Shown here one piece after another: positions 16,844 through 64,000 of a stretch of DNA of 64,000 nt. Below the pieces are notes generated by a model. The model was not told the origin of the DNA and made no database searches. It saw nothing but the letters and a program-made list of their open reading frames with translations. Made by a program: the position numbers and the translations under genes. How positions within the stretch are numbered: the stretch's first letter is position 1; each line of letters opens with the position of its first letter. Where the stretch lies: IMG/VR virus record IMGVR_UViG_3300036766_002289, positions 248,001 to 312,000 of that record, one strand, 5' to 3'.

Positions 16844-17380
16844 CTAAGTAGCATACATCGTGGGCCACAAATCGCTGCAAGTCCTTTTGTTCTTAGTATT
16901 TACGCCAGCGTTTTTGGCTATTTTTCTGTCATAATCATTAGGAATAAGACCGCGTGAGACTAGTTTAGTTTCTTCATCTCTCCACTCTTGCATCTTGGCT
17001 TGAAGCCATTGGTCATTAGCAGTGGTGGCGTCATTGATCCAGCTTTCAGGAACTAAGTGGTTAATAACGTCCTGAACATATTCGTGGGTTTCACGGGTAC
17101 GAATCGCTCTATTTTTTAATTTTTCGCAGCCTGGTGGCTGAAATGTATACAGATTCATTTCTTGGTCATAAGTGGTGAATTCGTGTCTAATTAGGGCAAT
17201 AAGGGCGTTACCAGAGAATGGTTTGCCGCTCATTGCTTCCATGATATGTTCACCTAATTTTTGTTTTTGCTCAGCGGATAAGAGGGCAATACGTCCAGGT
17301 GCAGGCCAGCCACGATGGGCAGGATTCCTTGGTTTGTAAATGATCTTGCCTTCTGTTAATAACCACTCTCTAAAGTTCAT
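16844..17380 (-). CDS. putative internal head protein with capsid-targeting-like N-terminus
   Basis: MNFREWLLTE N-terminus; TATATAA just upstream of the ATG. Confidence 0.5.
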   Translation of the reverse strand: MNFREWLLTEGKIIYKPRNPAHRGWPAPGRIALLSAEQKQKLGEHIMEAMSGKPFSGNALIALIRHEFTTYDQEMNLYTFQPPGCEKLKNRAIRTRETHEYVQDVINHLVPESWINDATTANDQWLQAKMQEWRDEETKLVSRGLIPNDYDRKIAKNAGVNTKNKRTCSDLWPTMYAT

Positions 17381-25551: not shown

Positions 25552-26786
25552 AAATTGAATTTCTAAAACTATATAATTATGCCAAACAATGTTGCAAGCA
25601 TAAATGATACATTATACTTATAAATTCAGGTTATATCCAAACGCTGACCAGCAGAAACGTCTCAGCCAGCACTTCGGCTGTTGCCGTTTTGTGTATAACC
25701 ACTTCCTTGCTCAACGTAAAGATGCTTACCTTGCTAACGAGAAATCACCGAATTATTATCAACAGGCTGGTGATTTAACTAAGTTGAAGAATGAAAAAGA
25801 ATGGTTGTATGATGCCAACAGTCAAGTTCTACAATTTGAATTAAAATGTCTGCAAGCCGCGTATAATAATTTCTTTGAGAGAAGGGCGAAGTTGCCAAAG
25901 TTTCATAATAAAAAGAACAAACAGAGTTTTACAATACCACAGCATGTGGGCATTAAGAACGATAGACTTTACTTCCCTAAATTCAAGGACGGCATAAAGA
26001 TTAAACTTCATCGTGAGATAGAAGGAGTGATTAAACATGCTACATTAAGTAGAAATTGTGCGGGTCAATATTTTGTGGCTGTTCTTGTTAAACGAGACAT
26101 TGAACAATTGTTAGGAAATAATAAAGAAATTGGTCTGGATTTAGGTATTAATGCACTCGTTACTTGTTCGGATGGAAAATCCTACAAAAACATTCGTCCA
26201 TATAGGAATTTGGAACACCGATTGCGAACATTAAGTAAGAATCTCCACCGAAAAAAATTGGGTAGCAAGAATCGTGAGCGAGCTAGGAAGATATTGGCTA
26301 AGTGCCATACAAAGATAGTAAATATTCGTAATAACCATTTGCACAAAGTATCCAAAAATATCATTGGCGATAACCAAGTCATCGTTTTGGAGAATTTGAA
26401 TATAGATGGAATGTTGCGAAACCACTGTCTTGCTAAATCTATTGCTGATGTATCATTTTCTGAATTGGTTAGACAAATTGAATATAAGGCAAATTGGTAT
26501 GGCAGGACAATAATTAAAATAGACAGATGGTTCCCATCTAGTAAAACTTGTTCAGAGTGTGGTTATGTTATGGATAACTTGCCTTTGAGTGTTAGAGAAT
26601 GGGAGTGTCCTCAGTGTCAAATAAAACATGATCGTGATAAGAATGCGTCCATCAATATATTGAATGAAGGAAAAAGAACTGTAGGAATTACAGGGATAGC
26701 GTCTGGACTTAATGTAAGACCTAAGAGTGATCTTGGGCAATCAAGGACGAAGGACGAAGCCACGCCATCTTAGGGCGGCAATTCAC
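25537..26786 (+). mobile_element. solo tnpB element (IS200/IS605 family, no tnpA)
   Basis: Follows TTTAT (25532-25536). Right end GAAGCCACGCC-ATCTTAG-GGCGGCAATTCAC has a subterminal hairpin and ends in TCAC. Confidence 0.75.
25604..26773 (+). CDS. tnpB: RNA-guided endonuclease TnpB
   Basis: YKFRLYP HTH; RuvC residues IGLDLG, VLENL, HDRDKNA intact; zinc ribbon CSECG/CPQC. Confidence 0.95.
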   Translation: MIHYTYKFRLYPNADQQKRLSQHFGCCRFVYNHFLAQRKDAYLANEKSPNYYQQAGDLTKLKNEKEWLYDANSQVLQFELKCLQAAYNNFFERRAKLPKFHNKKNKQSFTIPQHVGIKNDRLYFPKFKDGIKIKLHREIEGVIKHATLSRNCAGQYFVAVLVKRDIEQLLGNNKEIGLDLGINALVTCSDGKSYKNIRPYRNLEHRLRTLSKNLHRKKLGSKNRERARKILAKCHTKIVNIRNNHLHKVSKNIIGDNQVIVLENLNIDGMLRNHCLAKSIADVSFSELVRQIEYKANWYGRTIIKIDRWFPSSKTCSECGYVMDNLPLSVREWECPQCQIKHDRDKNASINILNEGKRTVGITGIASGLNVRPKSDLGQSRTKDEATPS

Positions 26787-49529: not shown

Positions 49530-50655
49530 TGGAATCTTTTCCCTATCCCCTTTTTTTGTACCTTATAACTTATATGTTAGTTGTACATTGAATTGTGATA
49601 AAGGAAAAGATTTCAAGGGGACAAAATGAAATACAAACTACGATTTCGTGGGACTGACCACATCCTTAATTGGATGGGTCATGAAGTAGCTTTCTCTGAG
49701 TCGGTGGCGGACATGCTGATATGGGATTCGGGTGGGGAGTTGGAGATTGTGTGGCCGCACGATTATCAGATTTAGCTTAGTTGTACCAAATCAAGGTAGA
49801 ATTCCTTACAAAGGAGATGTGATGCAGCTTCCTTCATTCAGCAATTACGGTGGTTATGCGTCGGATAACTATGGGGCGCATACACTTAGGTTCAATCTGG
49901 GGGCGATTTCGGTTTGGTATAGTTATCAGACTGTGGTTGCGTTCAGGGCGGGCCAGAGTGGGGAGTTGCGGGTATTGGACTATAAGGATTCGCAGACTAC
50001 CCGCAAGCATTTGAACAAGATTGATGGCGGTGCGGTGGCATGTCGTCTGAGTAAGGATGAGTTTCAGACGTTGTGGGACAAGGAAGTGAAACCTTACCTT
50101 AAAGCTTAGTTGTACCAAAATTCCCATGAATACATTAGCATGGTGTTTGTTGTTTTTGAATCCGCCCGACCGAACAACTGAGTTTGTCGGTTTAATTACT
50201 GACAAGAATGGGCAACAGGTCCACATTGAACTTGAAGTGAATCAGGTTGCGGTGGGCTATGACATTGTGCAGAATATCATAGTCAAGGTGGACAGGGAAG
50301 ACACTAGCGATTTTCGGGTGCAGTGGGGCCAATATGAATTGTGTACTGACTGCTTCATGGAATACGATGGTTCAGGTTTTGGTTGGGAGCGGCAAGATGA
50401 GTGGGTTGAACTAATCCATGACGGCGAAGTAATTTTCAGAATGTATGTAGCTCACTGGAGATAAAATGATTACTGAGAAGGACATTGCGGATCAGTGCGA
50501 GTTAATTCAGGATGATTTGGCTTGCATTCTGGATGGGGTAGATAATGAAACTTTGAACGCGGTTTGTCAGGTGATCGTGGACAGGCTGGCAATTTTGAAG
50601 GGCAAGATAGCTTAGTTGTACCAATCCCATTGTGATTTAACATAAAGGGGAAAAC

Positions 50656-51390
50656 ATGGCAAAGAAGAGTGACCGTCCGACGTTTGGGGTGCCCGATGAC
50701 ATTCTGCCGTCGTTCAAGCGGTATGTGGTGGCTAAGCAGATTTTCGAGATTGCACAATCCCGAATGGAAGCGGAGAATGGGGCAATCAAGGCCAAGATGA
50801 TTGATAGTTTCACGGATAGTCTGGTGCGTATCAAGCGCCGTCCTGCTAATCCACGTTTGACGTTGGCGGATGCTGGCAAGCCCGACATTGAGGGCCTGTT
50901 TCAGGTGCAGGAAAAGTTTTCTCCGCAAGCTGTGGAGGGTGATGGGCCAGTAGCCGAGCGGTTGAAGACTGCCTTTGTTTCCGCTGGTGTTTCGGCGGAT
51001 ACGGCGGATAAGATCGTGGCGAATGAGGTGGTTTGTGAAGACAAGACTACCTTAAAGCCTTTCAGTGAAATGATTAACGGTGCGCCTATTGAGCAAGAGT
51101 TGGCGGGCCGTTTGATGAAGCTTTTGCTTGATAGCTTCACGGATGATGAGCGGAAGTTGATGATTCAACCCGCGTCGAAGATTGAAGTTAAGGAAGGATT
51201 CTTTGAGCGGTTGGGCATTTACGTGAAGGATAAGGCCGAGGCGATTGGGGCAATTCGTGTGATGAAGCCTGTTCACTTCATGTCGCATATGAAGTTAGGG
51301 CTGAGTGATACACCGCAAGGGCGGTTGAATCGGCTCTATGAGTATAGTAAGGAAATGATTACTGGAGAGGTGCCCCCTTCCAAGGGCTAG
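50656..51390 (+). CDS. hypothetical protein (244 aa)
   Basis: AAGGGG RBS after a motif copy; strong terminator follows. Confidence 0.8.
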   Translation: MAKKSDRPTFGVPDDILPSFKRYVVAKQIFEIAQSRMEAENGAIKAKMIDSFTDSLVRIKRRPANPRLTLADAGKPDIEGLFQVQEKFSPQAVEGDGPVAERLKTAFVSAGVSADTADKIVANEVVCEDKTTLKPFSEMINGAPIEQELAGRLMKLLLDSFTDDERKLMIQPASKIEVKEGFFERLGIYVKDKAEAIGAIRVMKPVHFMSHMKLGLSDTPQGRLNRLYEYSKEMITGEVPPSKG

Positions 51391-51408
51391 GGCCAATCGG
51401 TCTTAGTC

Positions 51409-51440
51409 AACCCTAGTGCTTTCTGCACTAGGGTTTTTTT
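51409..51440 (+). terminator. intrinsic terminator
   Basis: AACCCTAGTGC/GCACTAGGGTT followed by a T-tract. Confidence 0.85.
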
Positions 51441-52359
51441 ATTGTTATAAATTTATAGCTTAGTTGTACTAAAAACCATATGAAACACATTACTGAAGAT
51501 TGTGAAGTTACTGTGGTTGATGGCGAAATTAGTGTGGATTATCGCCATGAGCGGGAAGTGACCATTACTGATAGTAATGGGATTCAACGGTTGCCCGCGT
51601 CGAGTGTTATTCCAGGGCTATCCCGCAATTGGTGGACTGCCAATTGGTCAGGGAGCCAGTGGAACTTGGACCTTGACTGTGGTTGTCAGAGGTTCAATGG
51701 TGTTACAACGACACGTCGCATCAATGAAGCGTTAAAGGTGGCGGGTTTGGACGCTGCTAAGGTTAAGGCAGTGGTGAGTGCAGCTAAGAAAAGGACGCAT
51801 TTTTCGGTAGGTAGGAAAGCTTAGTTGTACCAAATTGAACATGCCGCATTCGACTTCTGGCGAGGTCAGTGGTCCTTCACACCACTTAGACGGGATCGAA
51901 ACCCGTATGCGGTACTAAGGAGTAAACCTATGCCAGTTGAAGCTGTTGAAGGGGTTGATGGGAATTGGACCCTATATGAAAAGGGTGGCTTGCGAGCAAC
52001 GGCACGGGAATTCAAATCGAAGGAATTGGCCTTAGCTTGGGCTGTGAAAAAGGGCTGGAAGATAACTTAGTTGTACCAATTGAAAGGAATGAAGATGCTT
52101 TTCAAAAAGGTTACTGAGGGTTACGTTGAACAGACGTTCAATGATGCTGGGGAGTGTATTGCCCAGCGATTTGTGGCGGGTGAAGTGGAGTACGAGACGG
52201 AAGACGGTGATCCTATCAACGTGATGGATATGCCATTTGGCGGGAGGGAATACTTCCCCTTCGATATGAAGCAGCCTTCCGATGAGTGTTATAAGGAAGG
52301 CTAACTTAGCTTAGTTGTACCAAATCAATTGTGATTTCCTTTACTCAGGAGAATGGACA

Positions 52360-52860
52360 ATGCGGAATTCTTCTTCGTTCGCTGATTCGCTGGTTGAACT
52401 CATTGGCGGGCAGGTTCAGGAGGCCATCAACGATATGGACCTCAGTGACCAGATTGAGAAGGCAATCAGCAATTCCAACGAAATCGAGAAGCAGGTCGAG
52501 AAGCAGGTCGAGAGTGCGATGGATGACCTCGACATTGACGACAAGGTGAAAGATTCGGTGGCGGATTACGACATGAGCGAAGCCATCGAAAGCGTAATCA
52601 AGGACAATTACGATTTCCCCGAAATCTGCAAGGAAGCAATGGATGAGTTGCTGGGACAGCGTGTCAAGGATGAGTTGGAAGAAATCTACAAGTCAGCGGG
52701 TTTCATCGACGTGGTTGATGCGATTGTGCAGCATCGCCTTCATTGGATTGCCGCTGCAAAGCGTGCCAAGTTGGTGGATTATGTCAAGTTTGGCCCGCTG
52801 GTGCGATTTGTGAAGGGCAAGTATGCTGCTCTGGTGCAGTGGGTTGTCAAGAGTCGCTAA
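52360..52860 (+). CDS. acidic helical-repeat hypothetical protein
   Basis: AGGAG RBS; D/E-rich quasi-repeats. Confidence 0.7.
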   Translation: MRNSSSFADSLVELIGGQVQEAINDMDLSDQIEKAISNSNEIEKQVEKQVESAMDDLDIDDKVKDSVADYDMSEAIESVIKDNYDFPEICKEAMDELLGQRVKDELEEIYKSAGFIDVVDAIVQHRLHWIAAAKRAKLVDYVKFGPLVRFVKGKYAALVQWVVKSR

Positions 52861-53153
52861 TTCTTATAAGGGGAATCGCCCATCCCCTTATAACCTGGAT
52901 AGCTTAGTTGTACCAAACATGGAGATGAACATGGAAAGCAAGACACTTTCGCTGGAAGAAGTGGTTGAACGAATTGCTGAGTCACTTCGCCATTCAGAAG
53001 GCGACTTAGTTGCGGAAGTTTACAACGAGGTGATTGGAGGGAATCTGACCTATATGGGTGATTCCTACTTTAATGGGGATGGATAGCTTAGTTGTACCAA
53101 AGTGTGAGTAAGAAACAAGTTTTTCTCTTCTCTTTTTTGAAAGGGTTTTCGCA

Positions 53154-53465
53154 ATGGTCAAGAACGAACAGGTTCACGTCTGCGGTTCCGAGACTTCCAA
53201 GGGCTTCAAGGTGCTGCCGCTTCAGGTTCGGCATCGCAAGGTCAAGGAAGTCAAGGTTGTGAAGGCAAAGGGCAAGGTGGGTCGGCCCCGTGTCTACAAC
53301 GGCACCCATCGTCGCATCGTCGCGGCGGCTCTGAAGAATCACGGCCTTACCAAGGGTCTGGAGTTCCTCGCCAAGGAACGCAAGCTCAAGGTGTCCATGA
53401 CTCTGGCGCTCGCCGTCGCCAAGGAAAACGGGATTGAGTTCAAGCGTGGTCGGCCCGCCGCGTAA
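53154..53465 (+). CDS. highly basic putative nucleic-acid-binding protein ending -PAA
   Basis: K/R-rich; GRPR and RGRP AT-hook-like motifs; GC-rich codon bias. Confidence 0.65.
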   Translation: MVKNEQVHVCGSETSKGFKVLPLQVRHRKVKEVKVVKAKGKVGRPRVYNGTHRRIVAAALKNHGLTKGLEFLAKERKLKVSMTLALAVAKENGIEFKRGRPAA

Positions 53466-53633
53466 AGGAATGGGGGAATCGCCCATCCCCCTTCCCTGGA
53501 GTTAGACTCGGCCCTTCTTGGCTTGTGCCATTAAACGGGAGGCCCGTGGTGGGGCGGAAAAATTTACGGTAGTCTAACTTAGCTTAGTTGTACCAATTAG
53601 ATTGTGATTTCTTTTCTTTATGGAGGGCCAAAC

Positions 53634-53876
53634 ATGGCTCAGTCCGAATTGACCGAGGGTTTCGAGGTGTTTGAACTGCCGACGTATCAGACTTCGGCCA
53701 AAGAGTTTGCGGAGAAGGAAGGCGTTGACTACGCTGTGGCGCAGGGCTTCATCAAGCTGCTTGTGAAGCGTGGCGTGGCCGTTCAGCTTGCTTCCCGCAA
53801 GATTGAAGGGCAGAAGGGCAAGCCGACGAACATTTACGAGTTGCCCACCAATGTCTCTCTGAAGTTGGCTGCGTAG
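53634..53876 (+). CDS. putative winged-helix DNA-binding protein ending -LAA
   Basis: GGAGG RBS; ...L.KRG...GKPTNIY wing-like motif. Confidence 0.55.
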   Translation: MAQSELTEGFEVFELPTYQTSAKEFAEKEGVDYAVAQGFIKLLVKRGVAVQLASRKIEGQKGKPTNIYELPTNVSLKLAA

Positions 53877-53966
53877 TCGGGCATGGTGGTCTGGTGGCAG
53901 GGAGCCATCAGCGTAAGGTAGGCATACACTCCTACGCCACCTTAGCCTAGTTGTACCAGTCACTTT

Positions 53967-54006
53967 GGCTGAGTGGTGGAATGGCAGACACAAACCTTAG
54001 AAAATT
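53967..54006 (+). pseudogene. 5' half of a tRNA-Leu-like gene
   Basis: GGCTGAG-TG-GTG-GAATGGCAGA-CAC D arm nearly identical to that of the downstream tRNA-Leu; no 3' half; starts at motif+10. Confidence 0.65.
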
Positions 54007-54030
54007 TCATATCCTTTACTCTAATAGGAT

Positions 54031-54465
54031 ATGAAAACTTGCCCTATATGTTCTAAGGTGTTTAACTGGACTAAGAATGACGTATGTTCTTCTTGTCGTG
54101 TAGCTTGGTTACGGTATAAACAGCGCTCTAAAGCATACGAAATTCTTGGTAACGAGTGTGTTAAGTGCGGGAACAATGACCAAGACGTATTAACGTGCCA
54201 TCATCGCAAACCAAAAGAAAAATCGTTCATGCTTTGCTCTGCATGGGGTAGTATCGCATGGGAATTGATTGTAGACGAACTGAAAAAGTGCGAACTACTT
54301 TGTGCCAATTGCCATTTGAAATTCCATGCCAACGAGAATCAGAAAAGATTTAAGTTGGTTGAGAATTACTATCGGCCTCATGGTGGAATGGCATACACAG
54401 CAGACTTAAAATCTGCCGCCTATAACGGGCTTGTGGGTTCGAGTCCCACTGAGGCTATTCCTTAG
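54031..54465 (+). CDS. HNH endonuclease (ORF reads through tRNA-Leu)
   Basis: CVKCG...LTCHHRKP...ELKKCELLCANCH. Confidence 0.85.
   Translation: MKTCPICSKVFNWTKNDVCSSCRVAWLRYKQRSKAYEILGNECVKCGNNDQDVLTCHHRKPKEKSFMLCSAWGSIAWELIVDELKKCELLCANCHLKFHANENQKRFKLVENYYRPHGGMAYTADLKSAAYNGLVGSSPTEAIP
54374..54457 (+). tRNA. trnL: tRNA-Leu (anticodon TAA), CCA not encoded
   Basis: Acceptor GGCCTCA/TGAGGCT; D arm GTG/CAC; anticodon arm GCAGA-CTTAAAA-TCTGC; long variable arm; T arm GTGGG-TTCGAGT-CCCAC; discriminator A. Confidence 0.92.
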
Positions 54466-54510
54466 TTGTACCAAAAAGAGCATCAAACCTTTCGCCAGTA
54501 GGAGAGTAGA

Positions 54511-55143
54511 ATGCTTGTGACTGATTGCGAATCGAAACAGATGAAGCACGTTCTTGTACGCTGGTTTCGTCACCTTTTCGGGAAAACTTCTTGGAATGAG
54601 ATTTTTCCTAATCATGATGAGGGATGCGTCACAACGCAAAATAAAGGACGTGACAAATACCATCTCTATGAAAAATGGTTGAAGCGAGTTACGGCTTTTT
54701 TCGTTTCTTCTGATGCAACCTATGAACAAGCGGAGAGTTATTTCATCAAAAAACTACCATCTGAGTGGTGGTATGGTTGTCGGTCGGAATTGGTTGCTAT
54801 CTTGAGCGTGAGTCACAATGCCGCGAAGTGGGTAGCTGCAAATAAAGAGTTGGTTGCCAAGGAAGAGAAAACGTATTTTGATTGTCCCCATTGCGGCGGT
54901 TGTCACGGTTACAAGATTCCCGCAGACACCGATGAAGGCGAAATTACGGTGAAGTGTAAGCAAGAAAATGGCCAATTATTCAAGGTGCAATATGAAAATG
55001 CCAATGACCTTGGATTGACGCCAAACAAGGCAGATATGCCCACGATCATTAAAATCAAGAATTCAAATCGTGCTAGTCAGATTAAGACTGCCTTAGAGCA
55101 TTTGGGATTGGGATTGGGATTGGCACTAACGCCAGCGGCTTAA
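54511..55143 (+). CDS. hypothetical protein with zinc ribbon, ending -PAA
   Basis: AGGAG RBS; CPHC motif. Confidence 0.7.
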   Translation: MLVTDCESKQMKHVLVRWFRHLFGKTSWNEIFPNHDEGCVTTQNKGRDKYHLYEKWLKRVTAFFVSSDATYEQAESYFIKKLPSEWWYGCRSELVAILSVSHNAAKWVAANKELVAKEEKTYFDCPHCGGCHGYKIPADTDEGEITVKCKQENGQLFKVQYENANDLGLTPNKADMPTIIKIKNSNRASQIKTALEHLGLGLGLALTPAA

Positions 55144-55998
55144 CTTAGTTGTACCAAAGGGGGCAATGATGTACCGCGTAGTAACCAGAAACGCATTTGG
55201 TCATGAATTTTCTGTGATGAAAGAAGGAACAAGGGCCGAGTGCAAGCGGTTCATTCTTGGACGGTGGGGACATTGGCCCCCGTTTGCTGTCATTACGCAA
55301 CGGACTGAAAACTTTGAACGGTGTTTCTAACGGAGGAATCCCATGTTTGTGTTGAATGGTTTTTGTCGAAAAGAAGGCGATATGGAGCAGAATTTTAGTT
55401 CAGGCGAGACTGAACTGGCGCTTCATGTGGCCAAAATCTGGCAGAAGTTAGGCTGGCAACCGCGTCTCAAGCATTATGACGGCAGCGGTGTTCATTTCGT
55501 TAATTTCAATCCTCCGCTCCGTAAGGCAGCTTGATGCCAAGGGTTCGCCCACCCTGGTTTTACCTTAGTTGTACCAATCCCTTTAGGAGGCTGTTCATGA
55601 AGACTTGGAAATTTTATGGGTGGGGTGGGGGAAATGTCACTTGTCAAGGTGACACTGTTGTTGATGCACTAAAAGCAAGTGGTGGCTTATTTGAATTTGT
55701 GCGATATGAAGAAGTTGGCAAGGAGCCACAAACAACCGACGATGTTGATTTCTTGCTATATATTGCTGAGCGATTTTCTCGCCAGCTTAGTGGACAAGAC
55801 CAGCGTGAATTTGTGCGGATTTACGATAAATACGCGCCTAATTCAAAGCGAACTATTCTGAAAGAATTGAACAAAGTTGTTATTCACGCGGCATGGGATG
55901 CAAGGAACAACGCCGCCTAATCAGGGTTCTCGCCCACCCTGGTTTTACCTTAGTTGTACCAATTCAAGCAGATTACTCTTCTCTTTCTGGAGTTAGTC

Positions 55999-56508
55999 AT
56001 GCTGACTAAGGACTTCTTGACCGCTGGCAAGGCCATCTTCACCCTCGAAATCCCCCATGACTTCGCCAACAGGAACAACACCAAACCCCATTACACTTGG
56101 AAAGTGTCCAAACCCAAAAACCCTTCCTCATTTCTTTTTGTTTCTCTTCTCACTGGTCCCGATAACACCAACGACTATAAGTATTTGGGTCTTCTCTTCC
56201 CCCGTAATGGCATTGTAAATCTCACGGCCAAAAGCAATTTCGACGCTAAGTCATGGCCTGTCTTGCTCTTGCATCGTATTTGTGCCAACCTTTGGGGCAC
56301 GAACAAGATTGAGGCTAGTGGCTTCAAGCTGCACCATGAGGGTTATTGCTGCAAGTGTGGTCGGCTCTTGACGGTGCCAAGTTCCATTGAAAGTGGAATT
56401 GGTCCAGAATGCGGCAAGAAGGCTGTTTTCTATGGTGCCCCTGTTGTGACGGCAATGGATATTGCCAGCAATGGTGGTATCTATGAAGATGTATATGGGG
56501 GCGATTAG
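55999..56508 (+). CDS. DUF6011 domain protein
   Basis: HEGYCCKCGRLLTVPSSIESGIGPEC. Confidence 0.8.
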   Translation: MLTKDFLTAGKAIFTLEIPHDFANRNNTKPHYTWKVSKPKNPSSFLFVSLLTGPDNTNDYKYLGLLFPRNGIVNLTAKSNFDAKSWPVLLLHRICANLWGTNKIEASGFKLHHEGYCCKCGRLLTVPSSIESGIGPECGKKAVFYGAPVVTAMDIASNGGIYEDVYGGD

Positions 56509-57101
56509 CCCTTATAATAACATACCTTAGTTGTACATTATAAGAAAAGGAGAAACATATGACCTGGCGTGACGTGCTGCGTGGTTTACAGAATATGGGC
56601 AATAGCAAGCTGGATAGTGAAGCATTGCTTTATCTTCCAGCCGCGTTCTACAAGGACAAGGGCGAAATCGTTGCCTTCTCAAGGTTTACGACGATTGACG
56701 GTGACGTAGCTGAGGAGCATGACTGTACTGAGGGTGATCCTATTCTTTTGCGGTATTAGGGATTGCCTAGTTGTACCGAATGTGCTATACTCAAAAGGGG
56801 ATTGTGATGAAAGCGTTTGTATATGAATTCAGGGATGGACAGGCAAAGTGTGGTACGGGCCGTGTTACGCCGAATTATAAGAATTTGGCTAACATGAAGC
56901 GCTATTTCATCCAGAATCTTCCTGCTGGTTGTTACCAAATTCTTGCTTTTTTTGATTGGGACAATCGGTATAAGGATGCTGACATAACCGAAGTGGTTAC
57001 TGTGTATGGTTATCCGCCCGAAGTGACACGGATTTCCGTTCATAAGGGCAAATTGCTTTTGGGCAACGGGTGGATGATACCTTAGTTGTACGGAGAATCA
57101 T

Positions 57102-57521
57102 ATGACTATTCTACTCTTGATGCAAGGTGCTTCTGGTTCGGGTAAGTCCACCAAGGCCGAGGAATTGGCTGTGGAGCTTGATGCCGTCATTTACTCCACC
57201 GACGATATTTTCGCTGAAAGTGGCACGTACATTTTCAATCCGAAGTTGTTGGGTGTGAACCACAAGAAGAACTTGGACCGCACCATTGAGGCATTGAAGG
57301 CGGGCAAGAACGTCATTGTGGACAATACCAATACTCAGCGGTGGGAATGCAAGGGCTACGTTGAAGCGGCTCTGGAGTTAGGGGTAGAGGTTCGCTTCCA
57401 TCGTTGTGTTGGCAATTACCAGAACATTCATGGCGTGCCGAGCTACAAGGTTCAGCAAATGCGTGACCGTCTTGAGGATTTGACGGTTGAAAGCGTCATG
57501 GCGAGCAAGAAGCCTTTTTAG
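57102..57521 (+). CDS. P-loop polynucleotide-kinase-like protein (AAA_33)
   Basis: GASGSGKST, STDD, VIVDNTN, HGVP; ATG at motif+10. Confidence 0.85.
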   Translation: MTILLLMQGASGSGKSTKAEELAVELDAVIYSTDDIFAESGTYIFNPKLLGVNHKKNLDRTIEALKAGKNVIVDNTNTQRWECKGYVEAALELGVEVRFHRCVGNYQNIHGVPSYKVQQMRDRLEDLTVESVMASKKPF

Positions 57522-58848
57522 CTTAGTTGTACCAATTAGGGTATGATTACCTCTAATAGGAGAACGGCGATGAAGATTATCTGGACGGATGCGACGGAGG
57601 CCCAATTGCTCAAAGACACGCCGAAGTTGCTGGAGATTCATGAAAGGGCTTTGAAGTCGGACCCCACATGGGCATTCTTCGGGGGCACAATCACTATCGG
57701 TGAGCATAGCTATCAGATAGCTTAGTTGTACCAATTAGGTTGTAATTCCTTTAACTGGAGAAAGCCATGAAGACTTGCGATTTGAAGTTGGGCGACATTG
57801 TTCACTACAAGGGCAACACTGGCTTCTACATGGACATGACTGTGGTGAGCATTTTCGATGATGAAGTCGTGGTGTGGCGTCCTTATATTTGGATGACACA
57901 AGATGGTCCAGAGTTGAAGACGGAAAAAATTGTCTTCAGCGTAGAATACTCCAAGATGGAGTGGGAAGTCAAGAGTCGCCGCGCCGATTTGAATGCCAAC
58001 CGCGATTGGTACAATTGCGGACATGAGGTACCGAAAAAGGCGGAAATCAGTTGGTGTGGCATAGCCTAGTTGTACCAAATTAGATAACTCTTACTGGAGT
58101 CCAAAATGGACACATTTGAATCAGATGAAGAAGTTGGGCACGAAGAAGAAGTCAAAGAGGCTACGCACAAGGGCGTAATTTTGGCTGAGGATGATTTTGA
58201 GCTTGACCAGCTTGTGGTGGTGCATAGTCTCAAGGGCACGCTTGATACGGCCCCAATTATGGGGCAACCGCTCAAGTTCAAGGCGATTTGTCTGCCCTTC
58301 ATTATTGCCACAATTGTCCTTGAAAATCGGCCAATCACGCTGGACGCACGGTATCTACACTTCATGAAAATCAGTGAAGAGTTTGTGCGGGCGCAAATGT
58401 CCTTGCCGAACCAGCAGCAACAGCAGAAGAAGGGACCGCAAGCATAGCTTAGTTGTACCAACCAAGACGTAACTTAACTCAGTGGAGAGTAGAGATGCGT
58501 TACTTTCTGAAGTTGTCAACGAAGGATGGCTGGTACGAAGAGGTGGACGAATACACCTACAAGAATGCGCCCTACGCTATGGACGAAGGGGGAAATGATC
58601 CCCGTTATTGTGTGGGTGGTATCACCACTGATGGCGTCACAGTGGACGCTGATTTGCGTGGGGTTCCGCTCCGTGACATAGCTATTTTCGCAAGGGCATT
58701 GCAAGCCTTGGAACCAGCAAAGGTTGATGGCGGCTTCATTCGTCCAATGCCCGCGATCATCTTCAAAAAGGGCCGTTCAAACTTCATGCGAACAGCAGAT
58801 GGCAAGGTGTGGAAATCGGTGGCTTAGCCTAGTTGTACCAAAACATTT

Positions 58849-58986
58849 GCCCCTGTAGTGTAAACGGTAGCATACCTAATCACGGTTCTAAGGTAACGGG
58901 AATTCACGTTATGCTTATCATCTGGGAAGTACAACTAGATGCTGCGTGGTTGGTGGAGCAGAAAATCGAAAACTGCCAGGGGCACC
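58849..58986 (+). ncRNA. tRNA-like RNA with anticodon loop replaced by a two-hairpin domain
   Basis: Acceptor GCCCCTG/CAGGGGC + ACC; D arm GTGT-AAACGGTA-GCAT; extended stem 58875-84/58945-53; T-like arm GCAG/CTGC; starts at motif+10. Confidence 0.7.
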
Positions 58987-59098
58987 CTAATCTAATTGAA
59001 ATTTATGACAGAAATAACCTTATACTCGGTCTGATAGTTGGGCGGTAAGCTGAAAAATGCTTATCGCCTCCCATAAAAAGAAACAATGATTTATATTG

Positions 59099-59128
59099 AA
59101 CCGCTATACAGCGTTGTATAGCGGTTTT
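59099..59128 (+). terminator. hairpin/terminator
   Basis: AACCGCTATACA/TGTATAGCGGTT followed by TT. Confidence 0.65.
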
Positions 59129-59510
59129 ATCTATATCTTAGTTGTACAAGGATTGTTATGATTGAAATACTTGACCTTAGCTGTGTGCCAGTTGATGAAA
59201 AGTGCGAGCAGTTGGGAGTCAATTATGACCCCACCAAGGCAATCAAGGAATGCCGTGCCTTCATCCGCCAATTGCGTCGGCAATTCGGTGAGGAACCATT
59301 CGGGGCGCAGTTGAAGATTACGTCCAATCCACATGACTTCGGCACCTATCATGAGGTGGCCGTCAAGTTCCATGACCAATTTGAGGAAGCAGTTGAATAC
59401 GCTTTCAAGTTGGAATCGGAATTGCCCGAAAAGTGGGACGATGGTGCGCTGCGAGAGTTGGGCCTATTTGACCGATTAGTTTCCTAAACCTTAGTTGTAC
59501 CAAAATCCCC

Positions 59511-60608
59511 ATGAACGTACAAGACTATCTTCGCTCTGGCAAGACTCTGGAAAACTTGACTTCCGAGCTTGCTATCAGCGTAACCAAGCATGACTCTCTG
59601 CCGCTGGTCATTCTCAATTATGACCAGATTGATTCGCCTAAGACCAATCCCATCGTGCGGGAATGTCGCGGTCTGGTTCTCCAGTCTGAGAACTATTCGC
59701 TGGTGGCCCGTGCTTTCGGTCGCTTCTTCAATTGGGGCGAAGTGGCTGACGAAATGCCCTTGTTCGACTGGAACACTTGCATTGCCGACGAAAAGGCCGA
59801 TGGTTCCCTTGTCCTCATCTATAACTTTGAAGGCCAGTGGCTTGCCAATACCCGTGGCTCTTTCGCTGGTTGGCCTATCTTCAATGATGAATACAAGGCA
59901 AAGTATTTCGGCGTTGACCCGTCAATGCGCTGGTCCGATGCCTTCCTAAAGGCGCTGAACGTCAACAGCCTTGATGAGTTAAACCTTGACCCGTCCATTA
60001 CTTACGTCTGTGAGTTCTGTTCGCTGTGGAACAAGGTTGTACGGGAGTATCCTACTCCGTGCATGTATCTGTTGACGCGGTTTGCTGGTGAGCAAGAGAT
60101 TGGCCCTTTGACTCATCCCGCATTCCGAACGTTGCAGCGATTTCCCTTGACGAATGTTCAGGAAGTGCAGAACTTTTGCACGGATCATCCCGAAGCAACC
60201 TTTGAGGGGGTGGTTGTGAAGGACTCCAGCTATCGCCGCTGGAAGCTGAAGAATCCGCGATACGTGTCTCTGCACCACATGAAGGGCAATGGGGATGGCA
60301 TGTGGCGTCCTAAGTATATGCTGCCCTATATCCTCAAGAATGAAGGCGATGAACTGTTGACCTACTTCCCCGAAATCACCGAACTCTATAATGAGTATAG
60401 GGATAAGGTGAATGCAGAGTATGTCATGCTGGAGGCGCTCTGGCTGAAGAACAAGGACATTGTGAACCAAAAGGAATTCGCTTTGTCCATTGTGGGGAAG
60501 ACTCCGTTCACTGGTGTTTTGTTCAATCTCCGTAGGGATGGTGGGGATTTGAAGCGGTCGTGGTTGAACCATGAGGATGGAATCTTAAAGGTGCTGTTCA
60601 AAGCTTAG
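59511..60608 (+). CDS. T4 Rnl1-like RNA ligase
   Basis: RECRGLVL, FFNWGE, EKADGSL (motif I Lys), TRGS, EGVVV, KLKN; ATG at motif+10. Confidence 0.9.
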   Translation: MNVQDYLRSGKTLENLTSELAISVTKHDSLPLVILNYDQIDSPKTNPIVRECRGLVLQSENYSLVARAFGRFFNWGEVADEMPLFDWNTCIADEKADGSLVLIYNFEGQWLANTRGSFAGWPIFNDEYKAKYFGVDPSMRWSDAFLKALNVNSLDELNLDPSITYVCEFCSLWNKVVREYPTPCMYLLTRFAGEQEIGPLTHPAFRTLQRFPLTNVQEVQNFCTDHPEATFEGVVVKDSSYRRWKLKNPRYVSLHHMKGNGDGMWRPKYMLPYILKNEGDELLTYFPEITELYNEYRDKVNAEYVMLEALWLKNKDIVNQKEFALSIVGKTPFTGVLFNLRRDGGDLKRSWLNHEDGILKVLFKA

Positions 60609-60615
60609 TTGTACC

Positions 60616-60744
60616 AATTTGGTCTGATGACTCCCACTGATTACCTATGGGGCAGTGCGGTGGAGTTAGGGTGAGCAAGCCCTAGCGAAAAAGGTATAAA
60701 GAGCAACCGTCATTCCGTGGATTTGCTGCACGGATTCTTTTTTC
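60616..60744 (+). ncRNA. candidate small structured RNA with its own terminator
   Basis: Lies between two motif copies with only a 15-codon ORF; stems GACTCC/GGAGTT, CACTG/CAGTG, TAGGG/CCCTA; terminator TCCGTG/CACGGA + T-tract. Confidence 0.55.
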
Positions 60745-61407
60745 CTTAGTTGTACCGAGTTCATCATGGCTGAACTTTTGGTTTGCATCGACAAAGACTT
60801 GATTGAAATTAACGTCACGCATGAACGTGATGGTGGTTTCCCTAATCCAGGGTGGGAATCAGCGGGATGGTTCCCTTCTATTCATGACGCTTTGACCGAA
60901 GGCAAGCTGTGGCTGGACATGGGCAAGGACATGGGCCTCAAACGTGGGGCTAGAAGTCGTCCTCGTTACTGGTTGCAAGCGGCCTAAACCTTAGTTGTAC
61001 CAATTCAATCATGAAACAATTCTACATTGAAGTGATGATGCCGCCCTTCCCGATCAAAGGGAAGAAGTTCAAAGTCTGGTCAACCTATCCTGGCGATGCG
61101 TTGTCGCCTGATTTGACCATGTTGTTCAGCGTATGGGCGTTGGACAAGGAAGATGCAATTTCCAAGACGCTTTCGGGTGAAGCACATACGTTGCTTTCCC
61201 CCAATGCGAAGAAGCTTCAACTAGCATAAGGGGATACGATGATGGGTTGGCAGCGAAAACAAGATGAAAAGCGGAAGCTGAACGGTCAGAAGGACTGGAC
61301 ACGCGAACAGAAGGAGCAAATGAGGTTGTTTCTGAAGCAGTATCCACAAGGAGGGGAGCATGACCGAGAACGGCGAAAAGCTGGATGACCTTTGGATTGA
61401 TTTGGGC

Positions 61408-61439
61408 GGGGAAGGCTAAAAGGGGCCTTCCCCTTTTTT
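61408..61439 (+). terminator. intrinsic terminator
   Basis: GGGGAAGGC/GCCTTCCCC followed by T7. Confidence 0.85.
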
Positions 61440-62089
61440 GTTCCTATAATTAGCTTAGTTGTACTAATTAGGCTGTGATTCCTAAAACAGGAGCAGAACA
61501 TGAACGAACGACATGCGGGAATTCCGTGGATACCTGAAGCAATGCACGGATAAGCAGGTGCAAGGCGTCTACGATAAGGAAAACGAAGCTGACCGCGACA
61601 ATTACGCAGAATTGGCGATTGCGGAAGCAGAACGTCGTGGCATTATGCTGGACCTTAAACCTTAGTTGTACCAATTAGGCTGTGATTTAACCCTTGCGGA
61701 GGATCGTCATGGGTAACATCGAAGCCTTGGAAATGGTCGCCGTTCTTGCCAATTCGGCCCGCGAACAACTCTTGAAGGGCGAAAAGCCCTGCATCAGCAA
61801 TCTCAACCGTATCATCCACCTTGCCGTGACCGTCGAACGGGAATTCGATGAACAATGGCAAGCGGAAGGAGAGAAGAATGAGAATTGCAGTTGATTACGT
61901 AGACGGGGACTATAGGGAATATAATAGCCTCGAAGCTGCCGTCGAATTCATCATGGACCATGAGGCCGAAGTAGAACGCATCTATGAGGTTGACGTGGGC
62001 CAAGCTAAAATCAAAGAATACGGGTGCGAATGGAGTTTGAAGCTGGTAGAATTATAGCTTAGTTGTACCAATTAGGTTGTAATTAACCC

Positions 62090-62181
62090 CAAACAGGAGC
62101 AAGGTCATGCGTTATTGGATTCGTCACGAAGACCTCAAACAGGAGCAAGGTCATGCGTTATTGGATTCGTCACGAAGACCT
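62090..62181 (+). repeat. perfect 46-bp tandem duplication of RBS plus first codons
   Basis: 62090-62135 is identical to 62136-62181; CAAA microhomology at the junctions. Confidence 0.9.
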
Positions 62182-62398
62182 CAAAACGGCAAATTATTGT
62201 GACAACTATGATTGCCCGCTTGCACGGGCCGTCAAGCGGAAACATCCCCTCGTCCATGTCCAAGTCAATTCCCGCTATGTTTTCATGAACGGCAAGGCTT
62301 ACCACATTGCCACGCCGTCCGCTGACAAGCTGCTGTCATGGTCATGCAAAGAAATCATTCTCGACAAGGGCTTCCATGTCCGTCTCAGTGCGGCCTAG
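62153..62398 (+). CDS. hypothetical protein ending -SAA (paralog of 62919-63215)
   Basis: Shares MRxWIRxxDLxTANY...DCxLARAxKRK...KGFHVRL. Confidence 0.75.
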   Translation: MRYWIRHEDLKTANYCDNYDCPLARAVKRKHPLVHVQVNSRYVFMNGKAYHIATPSADKLLSWSCKEIILDKGFHVRLSAA

Positions 62399-62918
62399 TT
62401 TCAGGGTTCGCCCAACCCTGGCTTTACCTTAGTTGTACCAATTAGGTTGTGATTTCTTACCCTTTACCTGGAGTCTTGACAATGGGCAATGCTTTCCGTC
62501 TGGCCAAGCTGCTGGTGATCGAGAATCCCAATCGTTCCGCCAAGTCCATCCGAGAGGAAATCGAGAAGATGACGGGCATCAACCTCGATGGCCGCGTGAT
62601 CGGCGGCGAGAAGCGCATCCTCATCTATCGCAAGGGCAAAGCGGCCTAAGCCAAGGGGTCGCCCACCCTGGCTTAACCTTAATGGAGAAATCCCATGAAT
62701 GAAGAACTCAAAATCAAGCTCCACGAAATGCTCGAATCGTATTCAAGTCAACTTGATACGATTTGGTATAACTCTGATTCGGGTTCGCACATGGATTGGT
62801 GCCGTAGGCAACAAGCTGAGATTGCCGAACTCATTGCCGAACTCGAAGCTGTTGACGCGATTTGCTGGTAGGCATAACTTAGTTGTACCAATTAGGTTGC
62901 CCAAAACAGGAGAATACA

Positions 62919-63215
62919 ATGCGTTTTTGGATTCGTCTGGCTGACCTCCGAACGGCGAACTACAGTAGCAATACGGACTGCTTTTTGGCCCGCGCCATCA
63001 AGCGTAAAATCCCAAAGGCTAAGGTTCTGGTCCATCCCGATTTTGTCGAGGTGGGTAAAACTCACTACGCGATTGTCGGCAATGGAGTGGACCGACTCAA
63101 AGAGGACCATGACACCAAGGAAAAAGGCTTCCACGTCCGACTCCGTAAAGTGAGTGGCTGGCTAGAGTGTAACCAAGCGAAAGCCGCAATTGACCACATC
63201 AGGACGTTCAATTAG
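62919..63215 (+). CDS. hypothetical protein (paralog of 62153-62398)
   Basis: AGGAG RBS; shared motifs as above. Confidence 0.75.
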   Translation: MRFWIRLADLRTANYSSNTDCFLARAIKRKIPKAKVLVHPDFVEVGKTHYAIVGNGVDRLKEDHDTKEKGFHVRLRKVSGWLECNQAKAAIDHIRTFN

Positions 63216-63264
63216 CTTAGTTGTACCAATTAGGTTGTGATTCAACCCAAACAGGAGAACGGCC

Positions 63265-63393
63265 ATGTTTGAAGTCATTCGCAACGGCAAGGTTCTGTTC
63301 CGCAATGCTTCCTATCAGCGTTGTCTCCAATTCAAGGCCCGCCACAAGCTCAATGCCATCATTCGGCCCATGCCCCAAATGCTCGCGGCCTAA
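63265..63393 (+). CDS. 42-aa basic protein ending -LAA (absent from the ORF track)
   Basis: AGGAG RBS; MFEVIRNGKVLFRNASYQRCLQFKARHKLNAIIRPMPQMLAA. Confidence 0.7.
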   Translation: MFEVIRNGKVLFRNASYQRCLQFKARHKLNAIIRPMPQMLAA

Positions 63394-63671
63394 GCCAAGG
63401 GGTCGCCCACCCCTGGTTCTATACCCTAGTTGTACCGAGGTTCACATGCTTATTCCCCGCGCCGTAGTGTTTGATTCAAAAGGCAAAGCTCTTTGTGCTG
63501 GCAATCCCTGCAATGGTTACTCTCATCGCACCGACTGCCGCCATACGACCATGCACCTACCATCGGAACATTTCGATTTTATCGACGTGAACGTGGAAGG
63601 CAAGACTGAGGCCGAAATCATGTATGAAATCACGGCGGAATACCACATCTAAGGGCCATTCAGGTCTGAGT

Positions 63672-63810
63672 TGAGAGTGGCTTAAAATAGGAGCAAACCT
63701 ATCCGTGGCCGCATTAACTTCGGTTAGTGCCCGCCCAAGAAAGTAACGGGAGCCAACGGGAAACACCCTCCAAAAGTGGATTACCAATGACTCATCAATA
63801 ACCGCTCTTA
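63672..63810 (+). ncRNA. candidate multi-hairpin structured RNA
   Basis: Closing stem TGAGAGTGG/CCGCTCTTA; ATAGG/CCTAT; GCATTAAC-TTCG-GTTAGTGC; GGG/CCC; TCCA/TGGA. Confidence 0.6.
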
Positions 63811-64000
63811 CCTTAGTTGTACCAATTAGGTTGTGATTCCACCCCAACAGGAGCAAAGTCATGCTGGTTCTCGACAATCCCAAAGACATTGCCGCCTTCC
63901 GTAAGTTGGCACTACGTAGTGCTTTAGGGCTGGAAATGAAGGGCTTCAAACGGCATGGACCGTCTTGCTTCTCCATCATCAAGGCCGAATTCGGGCTGAA

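What the first reader, a model, noticed from the sequence alone, without database searches (positions are those of the whole stretch)
52864..63416. Family of 3' hairpins with covarying stems and a conserved UCGCCC loop, linked to -AA genes
Seen: seven hairpins just after stop codons (52864-93, 53472-91, 55537-57, 55921-42, 62401-21, 62651-71, 63395-416). Stems vary (GGGGA/TCCCC versus AGGGT/ACCCT) while TCGCCC is constant, and most lack a real U-tract. Six follow genes ending in -AA. Inference: a binding site for a protein or RNA that coordinates mRNA end formation or decay for the same gene class.
Basis: partly seen in the sequence, partly recalled or inferred. Interest (0 to 1): 0.6.

Follow-up and report, generated by a model that had tools for sequence, protein, structure and literature searches.

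The report
Terminator-like hairpins between huge-phage gene cassettes
The seven hairpins are real: they are the stem-loop half of repeated "stem-loop plus promoter-like motif" cassettes that separate tiny genes of unknown function in a roughly 390-kb phage, much like the PeSL terminator/promoter cassettes of T4-type phages, and not a special signal for genes ending in Ala-Ala.

Summary
Observation confirmed. All seven hairpins lie at the stated coordinates. An eighth lies 71 bases past the window end. All are on the coding strand, 1-9 nt after a stop codon, inside an 11-kb stretch of a 390-kb phage genome; none occur elsewhere in it.

The same hairpin (GGG..TCGCCC..CCC) occurs 13 times in a 373-kb relative and in two further metagenomic relatives. 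Compensatory and G·U changes support an RNA stem. Most copies sit just upstream of a roughly 100-copy promoter-like motif (YTAGTTGTACC) that precedes almost every small gene.

This architecture matches the PeSL cassettes of T4-type phages: a G-run/C-run stem-loop, then a conserved promoter, in a shuffled block of ORFan genes.

The loop is not fixed at a given junction. One orthologous junction carries three different loops in three phages. In a more distant relative the equivalent positions hold canonical U-tract terminators with related loops.

Ala-Ala C-termini are strongly enriched across the whole gene block (15-22% of genes in four lineages) and are a protein-level feature. Their link to hairpins is significant only in this phage and, more weakly, in its closest relative.

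Best reading: weak terminator/attenuator or 3'-end stem-loops of recombining gene cassettes. A new variant of a known kind.

The parts
52864..52893 (+). Hairpin 1: 11-bp stem TTATAAGGGGA/TCCCCTTATAA, loop AUCGCCCA. Starts 3 nt after the stop of ORF 52315-52860 (ends ...KSR, not AA). The motif follows 10 nt later.
   Evidence: (-14.9 kcal/mol, z -4.3)
53472..53491 (+). Hairpin 2: stem GGGGGA/TCCCCC, loop AUCGCCCA. Starts 6 nt after the stop of ORF 53154-53465 (ends RGRPAA). The next motif is 92 nt downstream.
   Evidence: the orthologous junction in G001 and L229 carries other loops
55537..55557 (+). Hairpin 3: CCA(A)GGGU/ACCCUGG, loop UCGCCC. Follows ORF 55343-55534 (ends LRKAA). Followed by UUUUACC and then the motif.
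   Evidence: the ortholog in G001 also has the hairpin, the one in L229 does not
55921..55942 (+). Hairpin 4: CAGGGU/ACCCUG, loop UCUCGCCC. Starts 1 nt after the stop of ORF 55597-55920 (ends NNAA).
62401..62421 (+). Hairpin 5: CAGGGUU/AACCCUG, loop CGCCC. Follows ORF 62153-62398 (ends LSAA).
62651..62671 (+). Hairpin 6: lower stem UAAGCCA/UGGCUUA encloses the stop codon; upper stem has a G·U pair; loop GUCGCCCA. Follows ORF 62482-62649 (ends GKAA). No motif follows: the next gene's ribosome-binding site comes directly.
63395..63416 (+). Hairpin 7: CCA(A)GGGGU/ACCCCUGG, loop CGCCC. Follows ORF 63265-63393 (ends MLAA). The ortholog in G001 also has the hairpin.
52904..52913 (+). One example of the promoter-like motif YTAGTTGTAC(C) that follows most hairpins. 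Other copies after hairpins are at 55565, 55950, 62429 and 63426. There are 66 copies on the + strand of the window and 101 in the genome.
61408..61433 (+). Canonical intrinsic terminator (10-bp stem followed by TTTTTT) in the same block, for contrast with the hairpin family.
51409..51435 (+). Canonical intrinsic terminator (11-bp stem followed by TTTTTTT) just upstream of the block, for contrast.

Best explanation
The hairpins are the stem-loop half of composite 'stem-loop + promoter-like motif + Shine-Dalgarno' cassettes. These cassettes punctuate a block of small ORFan genes in a huge phage with a T4-type terminase.

Each hairpin is transcribed as the 3' end of the upstream gene. It folds into a 5-11-bp stem (G-run 5' arm, C-run 3' arm) that begins 1-9 nt after the stop codon. 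It most likely acts as a weak intrinsic terminator or attenuator, and as a 3'-end-protecting structure, insulating one single-gene cassette from the next.

Because hairpin plus motif is about 40-50 bp repeated dozens of times, the cassettes also serve as homology for gene shuffling and for exchange of hairpin variants. That would explain both the near-identity of the copies and the discrete loop 'alleles'.

Shown: existence, strandedness, position, covariation, conservation in relatives, cassette architecture, shuffled gene order, loop exchange at one orthologous junction, and canonical terminators at equivalent sites in a relative.

Inferred: termination or attenuation activity, promoter function of the motif, and recombination as the homogenising force.
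For: Where they lie.
- 8 copies, all on the + strand, all in genome 300.8-312.1 kb, with 0 in controls.
- The stem starts 1-9 nt after a stop codon (the GGG core 3-9 nt), whereas the distance to the motif varies from 5 to 92 nt and the motif is absent once.

RNA structure.
- The pair outside GGG/CCC is A-T x14, G-C x4 and G·T x2. The next pair out is C-G x12, A-T x3 and G-C x1.
- At one orthologous junction the closing pair is A-T in G000, G001 and L229 but T-A in L298.

Relatives.
- The family occurs 13 times in the 373-kb relative G001, whose orthologs average about 60% amino-acid identity, and also in L229 and L298.

Context.
- The motif has 101 copies in G000. G001 has the variant TTAGCTGTACC (96 copies), and L299, L300 and L301 carry lineage-specific variants.
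- Sigma-70-type promoters are not enriched in the block. The phage encodes two sigma-like proteins.
- Upstream genes are ORFans, and gene order between G000 and G001 shows many single-gene relocations.

Link to terminators.
- In L299 the equivalent positions hold canonical U-tract terminators with loops GAAA, GACAGC(C/A)AA and GAAAGCAAA. One further hairpin there has a CGCCC loop but no U-tract.
- G001 321875 has loop GACTGCCAA followed by TTTTT.
- G000 294983 is AGGGCaatcGCCCTttttttc, where the G001 ortholog has CAGGGTcgcccACCCTG.

Published precedent.
- PeSL cassettes of T4-type phages have a GGGG...CCCC stem-loop just upstream of a conserved early promoter in ORFan-rich hyperplastic regions. 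A stem-loop was cloned into a lacZ reporter to test terminator function, the abstract calls the stem-loops effective terminators, and recombination crossovers were mapped within the loop (PMC2839356, PMC4122927).
Against: - No transcript data could be obtained, so termination is not shown.
- U-tracts are weak: a mean of 3.0 T in the 8 nt after the stem in G000 and 2.2 in G001. Only 2 of 7 pass a lenient terminator scan, and terminator-like sites are not enriched over shuffles.
- Canonical U-tract terminators exist in the same block, so the hairpins may do something different.
- TCGCCC is retained in lineages that differ by about 40% in protein sequence, and even in L300 and L299. That is more conservation than a generic terminator loop needs.
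- The promoter-like motif is not sigma-70-like, so the PeSL definition is not fully met.
- The hairpin/-AA association in G000 (p = 3e-4; p = 0.02 among genes with free ends) remains unexplained.
Confidence: 0.55

Rival explanations
1. One reading: the loop UCGCCC(A), presented on a variable stem, is a specific binding site for a phage or host protein (or an RNA). That factor controls 3'-end formation, antitermination or decay of a regulon that includes the -AA genes.
For: TCGCCC is invariant in 22 copies across four genomes while stem positions covary. It also appears in the more distant L300 and L299. Other loops form discrete recurring types (GAAAGCCAA, GACTGC(C)AA) rather than a random spread, as expected for recognition classes. 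Strand bias is 21:0. The hairpin/-AA association is significant in G000 and G001.
Against: The loop differs at the same orthologous junction in three phages, while the gene and its -AA end are kept. Hairpins occur without -AA (9 of 13 in G001) and -AA without hairpins. There is no association in L299 or L300. No candidate binding protein was identified and no Rfam family matches. The invariance is partly ascertainment, since the family was defined by the loop.
Confidence: 0.15
2. A pure mRNA stabiliser: the hairpins do not terminate transcription but block 3'-to-5' exonucleases after read-through transcripts are processed, as REP-type or other 3' stem-loops do.
For: The stem lies directly after the stop codon and often encloses it. 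U-tracts are absent. Canonical terminators are used elsewhere in the block. The motif between genes could be a processing site rather than a promoter.
Against: Relatives have true terminators at equivalent sites. No evidence of processing is available. Most genes of the block have no hairpin at all.
Confidence: 0.15
3. A DNA-level element: a palindrome or cruciform recognised by a recombinase, nuclease or repressor. It would mobilise or regulate ORFan cassettes, as the PeSL authors speculated for GGGG...CCCC.
For: Gene order is shuffled and hairpins are gained or lost at orthologous junctions. Each genome has its own flank: CCCTGG in G000 and CCCTGC in G001. In RB49 a PeSL crossover was mapped within the loop.
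Against: G·T pairs would be A·C mismatches on the other strand. The asymmetric loop is always in one orientation. Spacing is fixed relative to the stop codon, not to the motif. No Y1 transposase/RAYT is present, and the TnpB gene lies 27 kb away.
Confidence: 0.1
4. Decaying relics of duplicated terminators with no present function.
For: U-tracts are weak. Degenerate copies exist (G001 13934; L133 5660).
Against: Stems are maintained by compensatory changes, and the family is retained in lineages with saturated synonymous divergence.
Confidence: 0.05

Closest known systems
PeSL (promoter-early stem-loop) cassettes of T4-type phages (Arbiol, Comeau & Krisch 2010, PMC2839356; Comeau et al. 2014, PMC4122927)
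   Same: An intergenic stem-loop with a G-run/C-run stem lies just upstream of a highly conserved promoter element, followed by a Shine-Dalgarno sequence and a start codon. The cassettes are repeated between small ORFan genes in a plastic genome block. Consensus sequences are lineage-specific. Cassettes are linked to indels and relocations between related phages. The phage has a T4 gp17-like terminase and an rIIA gene.
   Different: The promoter-like element (ATAGCTTAGTTGTACC, core YTGTACY) is not sigma-70-like or Mot-box-like. The host and temporal class are unknown. The hairpins have 5-9-nt loops of a few discrete conserved types and mostly lack a T-tract. The genome is 390 kb or more and only distantly T4-like (terminase about 29% identical). 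No mini-circles or terminator assays exist.
Canonical intrinsic (Rho-independent) terminators
   Same: A GC-rich stem-loop directly after a stop codon. Related phages have hairpins with similar loops plus U-tracts at equivalent sites.
   Different: The tail holds 1-4 T in 8 nt instead of 5 or more. The loop sequence is conserved. Canonical terminators coexist in the same block.
Lambda-type boxB / nut hairpins (N-dependent antitermination)
   Same: A short stem with a sequence-conserved loop on early transcripts. One loop type begins GAAA.
   Different: There are 8-13 copies per genome, placed at gene ends rather than one per early operon. There is no boxA-like partner, and no N-like protein was identified. 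This is a resemblance recalled from knowledge and was not tested.
REP/BIME elements with RAYT transposases
   Same: Repeated extragenic palindromes after stop codons that can stabilise upstream mRNA.
   Different: These lie in a phage, all in one orientation. No Y1/RAYT gene is present, and there is no conserved GTAG-type 5' tetranucleotide.

Membership tests
PeSL composite terminator/promoter cassettes | Stem-loop located intergenically, just upstream of a conserved promoter element followed by SD and start codon | tested here: met
   6 of 8 hairpins in G000 and 10 of 13 in G001 are followed within 5-14 nt by the motif, then by an SD and ATG.
PeSL composite terminator/promoter cassettes | Stem built from a G tract followed by a C tract (GGGG...CCCC) | tested here: met
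   GGG/CCC is invariant and GGGG/CCCC occurs in several copies.
PeSL composite terminator/promoter cassettes | Promoter part is sigma-70-like (-35/N17/-10) or a T4 Mot-box middle promoter | tested here: not met
   The sigma-70 scan found 11 sites against 17 expected from shuffles, and none coincide with the motif. The motif logo ATAgCTTAGTTGTACCAa has no -35/-10 spacing.
PeSL composite terminator/promoter cassettes | Concentrated in hyperplastic ORFan regions and associated with indels or rearrangements between related phages | tested here: met
   The motif is densest at 280-320 kb. Genes are ORFans. Among 49 ortholog pairs there are many single-gene relocations, and hairpins are gained or lost at junctions.
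PeSL composite terminator/promoter cassettes | Stem-loop terminates or attenuates transcription; promoter is active early | not testable with these tools
No transcript data are available.
PeSL composite terminator/promoter cassettes | Host genome is a T4-like myovirus | tested here: inconclusive
   The terminase hits T4 gp17 homologs at about 29% identity. A portal protein and RIIA are present. The genome is 390 kb and most large ORFs have no family.
Canonical intrinsic terminator | GC-rich hairpin immediately followed by a U-tract (5 or more U in 8 nt) | tested here: not met
   The tail holds 1-4 T, with a mean of 3.0. 2 of 7 pass a lenient scan.
REP/RAYT or IS200/IS605 end hairpins | Cognate Y1 (HUH) transposase in the genome | tested here: not met
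   PF01797 has no hit in G000, while the control genomes do.
Any curated RNA family (Rfam 15) | Covariance-model match | tested here: not met
   Only tRNA-Leu matched in 50,000-64,000 at E <= 1.

The most novel reading that the evidence does not exclude
The discrete, cross-lineage loop types (UCGCCCA, GAAAGCCAA, GACUGCCAA) are address labels read by phage-encoded RNA-binding factors. Together with an ssrA-like Ala-Ala C-terminal degron on about 20% of the block's proteins, they would form a two-level timer (mRNA 3'-end control plus programmed proteolysis) for transient early proteins of huge phages.
Probability: 0.08. Interest if true: 0.75.

Novelty: new variant of a known kind. Interest (0 to 1): 0.4.

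Why it matters
It extends the PeSL idea (mobile terminator/promoter cassettes that insulate and shuffle accessory genes) from T4-type phages to a clade of huge phages on contigs of 373-623 kb. These phages use an unrelated, lineage-specific promoter-like motif with core YTGTACY.

It also gives a concrete, testable set of elements for studying how huge phages organise and exchange their many ORFans:
- about 100 motif copies and 8-13 hairpins per genome;
- a few recurring loop types.

Separately, the strong enrichment of Ala-Ala C-termini in these proteins suggests programmed instability and deserves its own test.

Tried and rejected
No direct 3'-end data exist.
- Phage database (megablast) found only a tRNA match.
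- IMG/VR pattern scans for the motif and the hairpin gave only the one relative; other hits were single chance matches in high-GC contigs.
- The metagenome scan was mostly chance hits and yielded one true relative, L229.
- LR756511 (595 kb; terminase 67% identical) has neither motif nor hairpin.
- The covariance-model alignment stayed ungapped, so its columns mix registers. Pair counts were therefore made by script, anchored on GGG/CCC.
- tRNA T-arm mimic: rejected by inspection. The loop is 5-8 nt and lacks the conserved A58 position.
- Cyanobacterial HIP1 relation: rejected. GCGATCGC is absent from the genome.
- REP/RAYT: rejected.
- Idea that '-AA is encoded by a repeated DNA cassette': rejected, because the Ala codons differ among copies (GCG GCC, GCC GCC, GCA GCT, GCC GCG, GCT GCG, GCA GCG), the proteins are unrelated, and 56 of 58 homologs of one family keep -AA.
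- Host identification through TnpB gave only a MAG fragment labelled Proteobacteria. The host remains unknown.
- No phage RNA polymerase was found with Pfam models. The T7-type model rang nowhere, not even in the controls, so that negative result is weak.
Full report
**Setting.**
The window is bases 248,001-312,000 of a single 390,039-bp virus record (GC 39%). The record encodes:
- a portal protein and RIIA;
- a T4 gp17-type large terminase;
- two sigma-like proteins;
- no RNA polymerase detectable with Pfam models.

The finding lies in a GC-richer block (47-50%) of very small + strand genes. None of those tested matches Pfam or an annotated PHROG family.

**Checking the observation.**
- The pattern GGG-N0-4-TCGCCC-N0-2-CCC hits 8 distinct sites in the whole genome. 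All are on the + strand between 300,870 and 312,087, with none on the reverse strand and none for a reversed control pattern. The eighth copy is 71 bases beyond the window end.
- A covariance model built from the copies recovers exactly these eight.
- Predicted RNA stems have free energies of -10 to -16 kcal/mol. Seven of eight fold better than shuffles, with z-scores of -1.9 to -4.3.
- The GGG core starts 3-9 nt after the stop codon of an ORF (the full stem 1-9 nt), and in several copies the lower stem encloses the stop codon.
- The 8-nt tail holds only 1-4 T, and just two copies pass a lenient terminator scan.
- Six of the eight upstream ORFs end in Ala-Ala.

**What surrounds them.**
The dominant feature of the region is a motif, YTAGTTGTAC(C).
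- It occurs 66 times on the + strand of the window and 101 times in the genome, against 3.5 expected in the window. It is densest at 280-320 kb.
- Its logo is ATAgCTTAGTTGTACCAa.
- It sits in almost every intergenic gap, either about 10 nt or about 35-40 nt upstream of an SD-ATG.
- Its TAG often serves as the stop codon of the upstream gene, which is why many proteins end in IA, IP or KA.
- Sigma-70-type promoters are not enriched in the block (11 found, 17 expected).

Six of the eight hairpins lie 5-11 nt upstream of a motif copy. One has a 92-nt spacer, and one has no motif after it. The hairpin is therefore positioned relative to the upstream stop codon, not the downstream motif.

Canonical terminators with long T-tracts also occur in the block.

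**Relatives.**
- *G001.* The block's RNA ligase (window 59511-60608) led to a 373-kb IMG/VR contig, G001 (locus L133), with a 74% identical ligase.
  - It carries 96 copies of a one-base variant of the motif (TTAGCTGTACC) and 13 hairpins with the same GGG..TCGCCC..CCC core. All are on the + strand, in the corresponding block.
  - A 596-kb metagenome contig is 100% identical to it over 12,958 bp.
- *L229 and L298.* Two further metagenomic fragments carry both the motif and the hairpins.
- *More distant relatives.* These were found through homologs of the 103-aa protein at 53154-53465. Each has its own motif variant around a shared core YTGTACY:
  - TAATTGCAATTGTACC in L299, on a 623-kb contig;
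  - WAGCTGTACT in L300;
  - AAGGTTGTACCT in L301.
- LR756511 (595 kb; terminase 67% identical) has neither element.

**Structure and covariation.**
I anchored 22 copies on the invariant GGG/CCC core.
- The next pair outward is A-T in 14 copies, G-C in 4 and G·T in 2.
- The pair beyond that is C-G in 12, A-T in 3 and G-C in 1.
- At the junction orthologous to hairpin 1, the loop-closing pair is A-T in G000, G001 and L229 but T-A in L298, and the lower stem differs through compensated changes.

The G·T pairs, the asymmetric loop and the 21:0 strand bias argue for an RNA hairpin on the sense transcript rather than a DNA palindrome.

**Is the loop special?**
TCGCCC is the commonest loop of this positional class and recurs even in L300 (AAAGGGCatcgcccGCCCTTT) and L299 (AGGGAGTcgcccACTCCCT). 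But it is not required at a given site.

After the RGRP(K)AA gene the three lineages carry:
- G000: GGGGGA-atcgccca-TCCCCC
- G001: CAAGGGGG-gactgcaa-CCCCCTTG
- L229: GGGGA-gaaagccaa-TCCCC

These other loops are themselves recurrent types:
- GAAAGCCAA occurs after the RNA ligase in both G001 and L298.
- GACTGC(C)AA occurs in G000 at genome 315,213 and in G001 at 321,875. The G001 copy has a TTTTT tail and is a canonical terminator.

In L299 the equivalent positions are mostly canonical U-tract terminators with loops GAAA, GACAGC(C/A)AA and GAAAGCAAA. In G000 itself, the NLAA gene at genome 294,603 is followed by AGGGCaatcGCCCTttttttc, where its G001 ortholog has CAGGGTcgcccACCCTG.

The hairpin family therefore grades into ordinary terminators, and its variants are exchanged between sites.

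**Gene shuffling.**
Forty-nine ortholog pairs between the G000 and G001 blocks average 60% amino-acid identity. They are broadly collinear but show many single-gene relocations. Hairpins are present at three orthologous junctions in both phages, at two only in G000 and at three only in G001.

**Comparison with known systems.**
This is the architecture described as PeSL (promoter-early stem-loop) in T4-type phages. Those cassettes have:
- a stem-loop, usually GGGG...CCCC, just upstream of a conserved early promoter, SD and start codon;
- repetition between ORFans of the hyperplastic regions;
- lineage-specific consensus sequences;
- stem-loops reported as effective transcription terminators (lacZ reporter constructs were built to test this);
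- recombination between cassettes, with a crossover mapped within the loop (PMC2839356 and PMC4122927).

Differences here:
- the promoter-like element is not sigma-70-like;
- the hairpins mostly lack T-tracts;
- the loops fall into a few conserved types;
- the phage is a huge phage only distantly related to T4.

I therefore file the finding as working like a PeSL cassette, and as a new variant rather than a member in the strict sense.

**The -AA link.**
Ala-Ala termini are strikingly enriched in the block.
- In G000, 10 of 50 gene ends at 298-320 kb are -AA, against about 1% in the rest of the genome and about 0.5% expected from composition.
- Rates are similar in L299 (6 of 29) and L300 (6 of 27).
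- The Ala codons differ among copies, and the eleven G000 proteins are unrelated to each other.
- Orthologs keep -AA while the preceding residue changes.
- 56 of 58 homologs of one family end in RGRP(K)AA.

So -AA is a protein-level property of this gene class. An ssrA-like ClpX degron is an obvious hypothesis, drawn from general knowledge and untested.

Its association with hairpins:
- G000: 6 of 8 against 4 of 42, p = 3e-4. Among genes whose stop is free of the motif, 6 of 8 against 2 of 11, p = 0.02.
- G001: weaker, 4 of 13 against 1 of 33, p = 0.02. Two of these are orthologs of G000 cases.
- L299 and L300: absent (p = 0.36 and p = 1).

Both -AA without a hairpin and a hairpin without -AA are common. 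I conclude that the link is not mechanistic, although its cause in G000 is unexplained.

**Mechanism and confidence.**
Most likely (about 0.55): the hairpins are weak terminator/attenuator and 3'-end stem-loops that insulate single-gene cassettes. They are kept similar by selection on the stem and by exchange among cassettes.

Rivals:
- a loop-specific factor-binding site (0.15);
- a pure mRNA stabiliser (0.15);
- a DNA-level recombination or operator site (0.10);
- functionless relics (0.05).

All translations used genetic code 11. 

Noticed in passing
window, 66 sites on the + strand (e.g. 52904, 55565, 57082, 62429); genome-wide 101; relatives L133, L298, L299, L300, L301: A promoter-like motif ATAGCTTAGTTGTACC precedes almost every small gene. 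Its TAG is often the stop codon of the upstream gene, giving IA, IP or KA C-termini. Each related phage has its own variant around a shared core YTGTACY: TTAGCTGTACC, TAATTGCAATTGTACC, WAGCTGTACT, AAGGTTGTACCT. It is not sigma-70-like. The phage encodes two sigma-like proteins. Whether it is a promoter or an RNA processing site is unknown.
   Followed up: partly
window 53154-53465, 53604-53876, 54511-55143, 55343-55534, 55597-55920, 60766-60987, 62153-62398, 62482-62649, 63265-63393; also L133, L299, L300: Ala-Ala C-termini occur on 15-22% of the block's proteins in four phage lineages, against about 1% in the rest of the genome. The proteins are unrelated ORFans, the Ala codons vary, and orthologs keep -AA. 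56 of 58 homologs of the 103-aa protein end in RGRP(K)AA, an AT-hook-like tail. This is a possible ssrA-like degron; untested.
   Followed up: partly
window 62091-62182: A 46-bp perfect tandem duplication (62091-62136 and 62137-62182) duplicates the Shine-Dalgarno sequence and the first codons of gene 62153-62398. It creates a second short ORF at 62107-62202.
   Followed up: no
window 53975-54465: An HNH-like ORF (54031-54465; CxxC...HH...CANCH) runs into tRNA-Leu(UAA) at 54374-54457. A partial copy of the tRNA's 5' part (GGTGGAATGGCAGACAC) lies just upstream of the ORF. This may be the footprint of a homing-endonuclease insertion.
   Followed up: no
window about 53877-53946; L133 about 16944-17029; L299 about 17280-17330: A structured intergenic element with the conserved core AGCGTAAGGTAGGCAWAC..CTACRCC is shared by three lineages. 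Predicted free energy is -26 to -50 kcal/mol. It is a candidate small RNA with no Rfam match.
   Followed up: no
window 58829-58995: An inverted copy of the motif (58929-58938, - strand) faces the + strand copy at 58829-58838, within a segment whose ends look like tRNA acceptor halves (GCCCCTG...CAGGGGC). ARAGORN and Rfam call no tRNA there.
   Followed up: no
window 25604-26773: A TnpB (IS605 OrfB / Cas12f-like TNB) gene lies in the phage with no Y1 TnpA anywhere in the genome. Its closest genomic relative (68% identity) is a short contig of a MAG labelled Proteobacteria.
   Followed up: partly
L296 versus L133 (G001): The 373-kb IMG/VR 'provirus' record G001 is 100% identical over 12,958 bp to a 596,394-bp metagenome contig (Ga0071082_100015). 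The IMG/VR record may therefore be a cut of a roughly 600-kb phage genome, and the same may apply to the 390-kb G000 record.
   Followed up: no
whole genome G000: GATC is under-represented: 557 observed against about 1363 expected from base composition. This suggests avoidance of a GATC-specific restriction system in the unknown host.
   Followed up: no
window 51843-51915: ARAGORN calls a tRNA-Glu(UUC) 13 nt after a motif copy, but the Rfam tRNA model did not report it at E <= 1.
   Followed up: no
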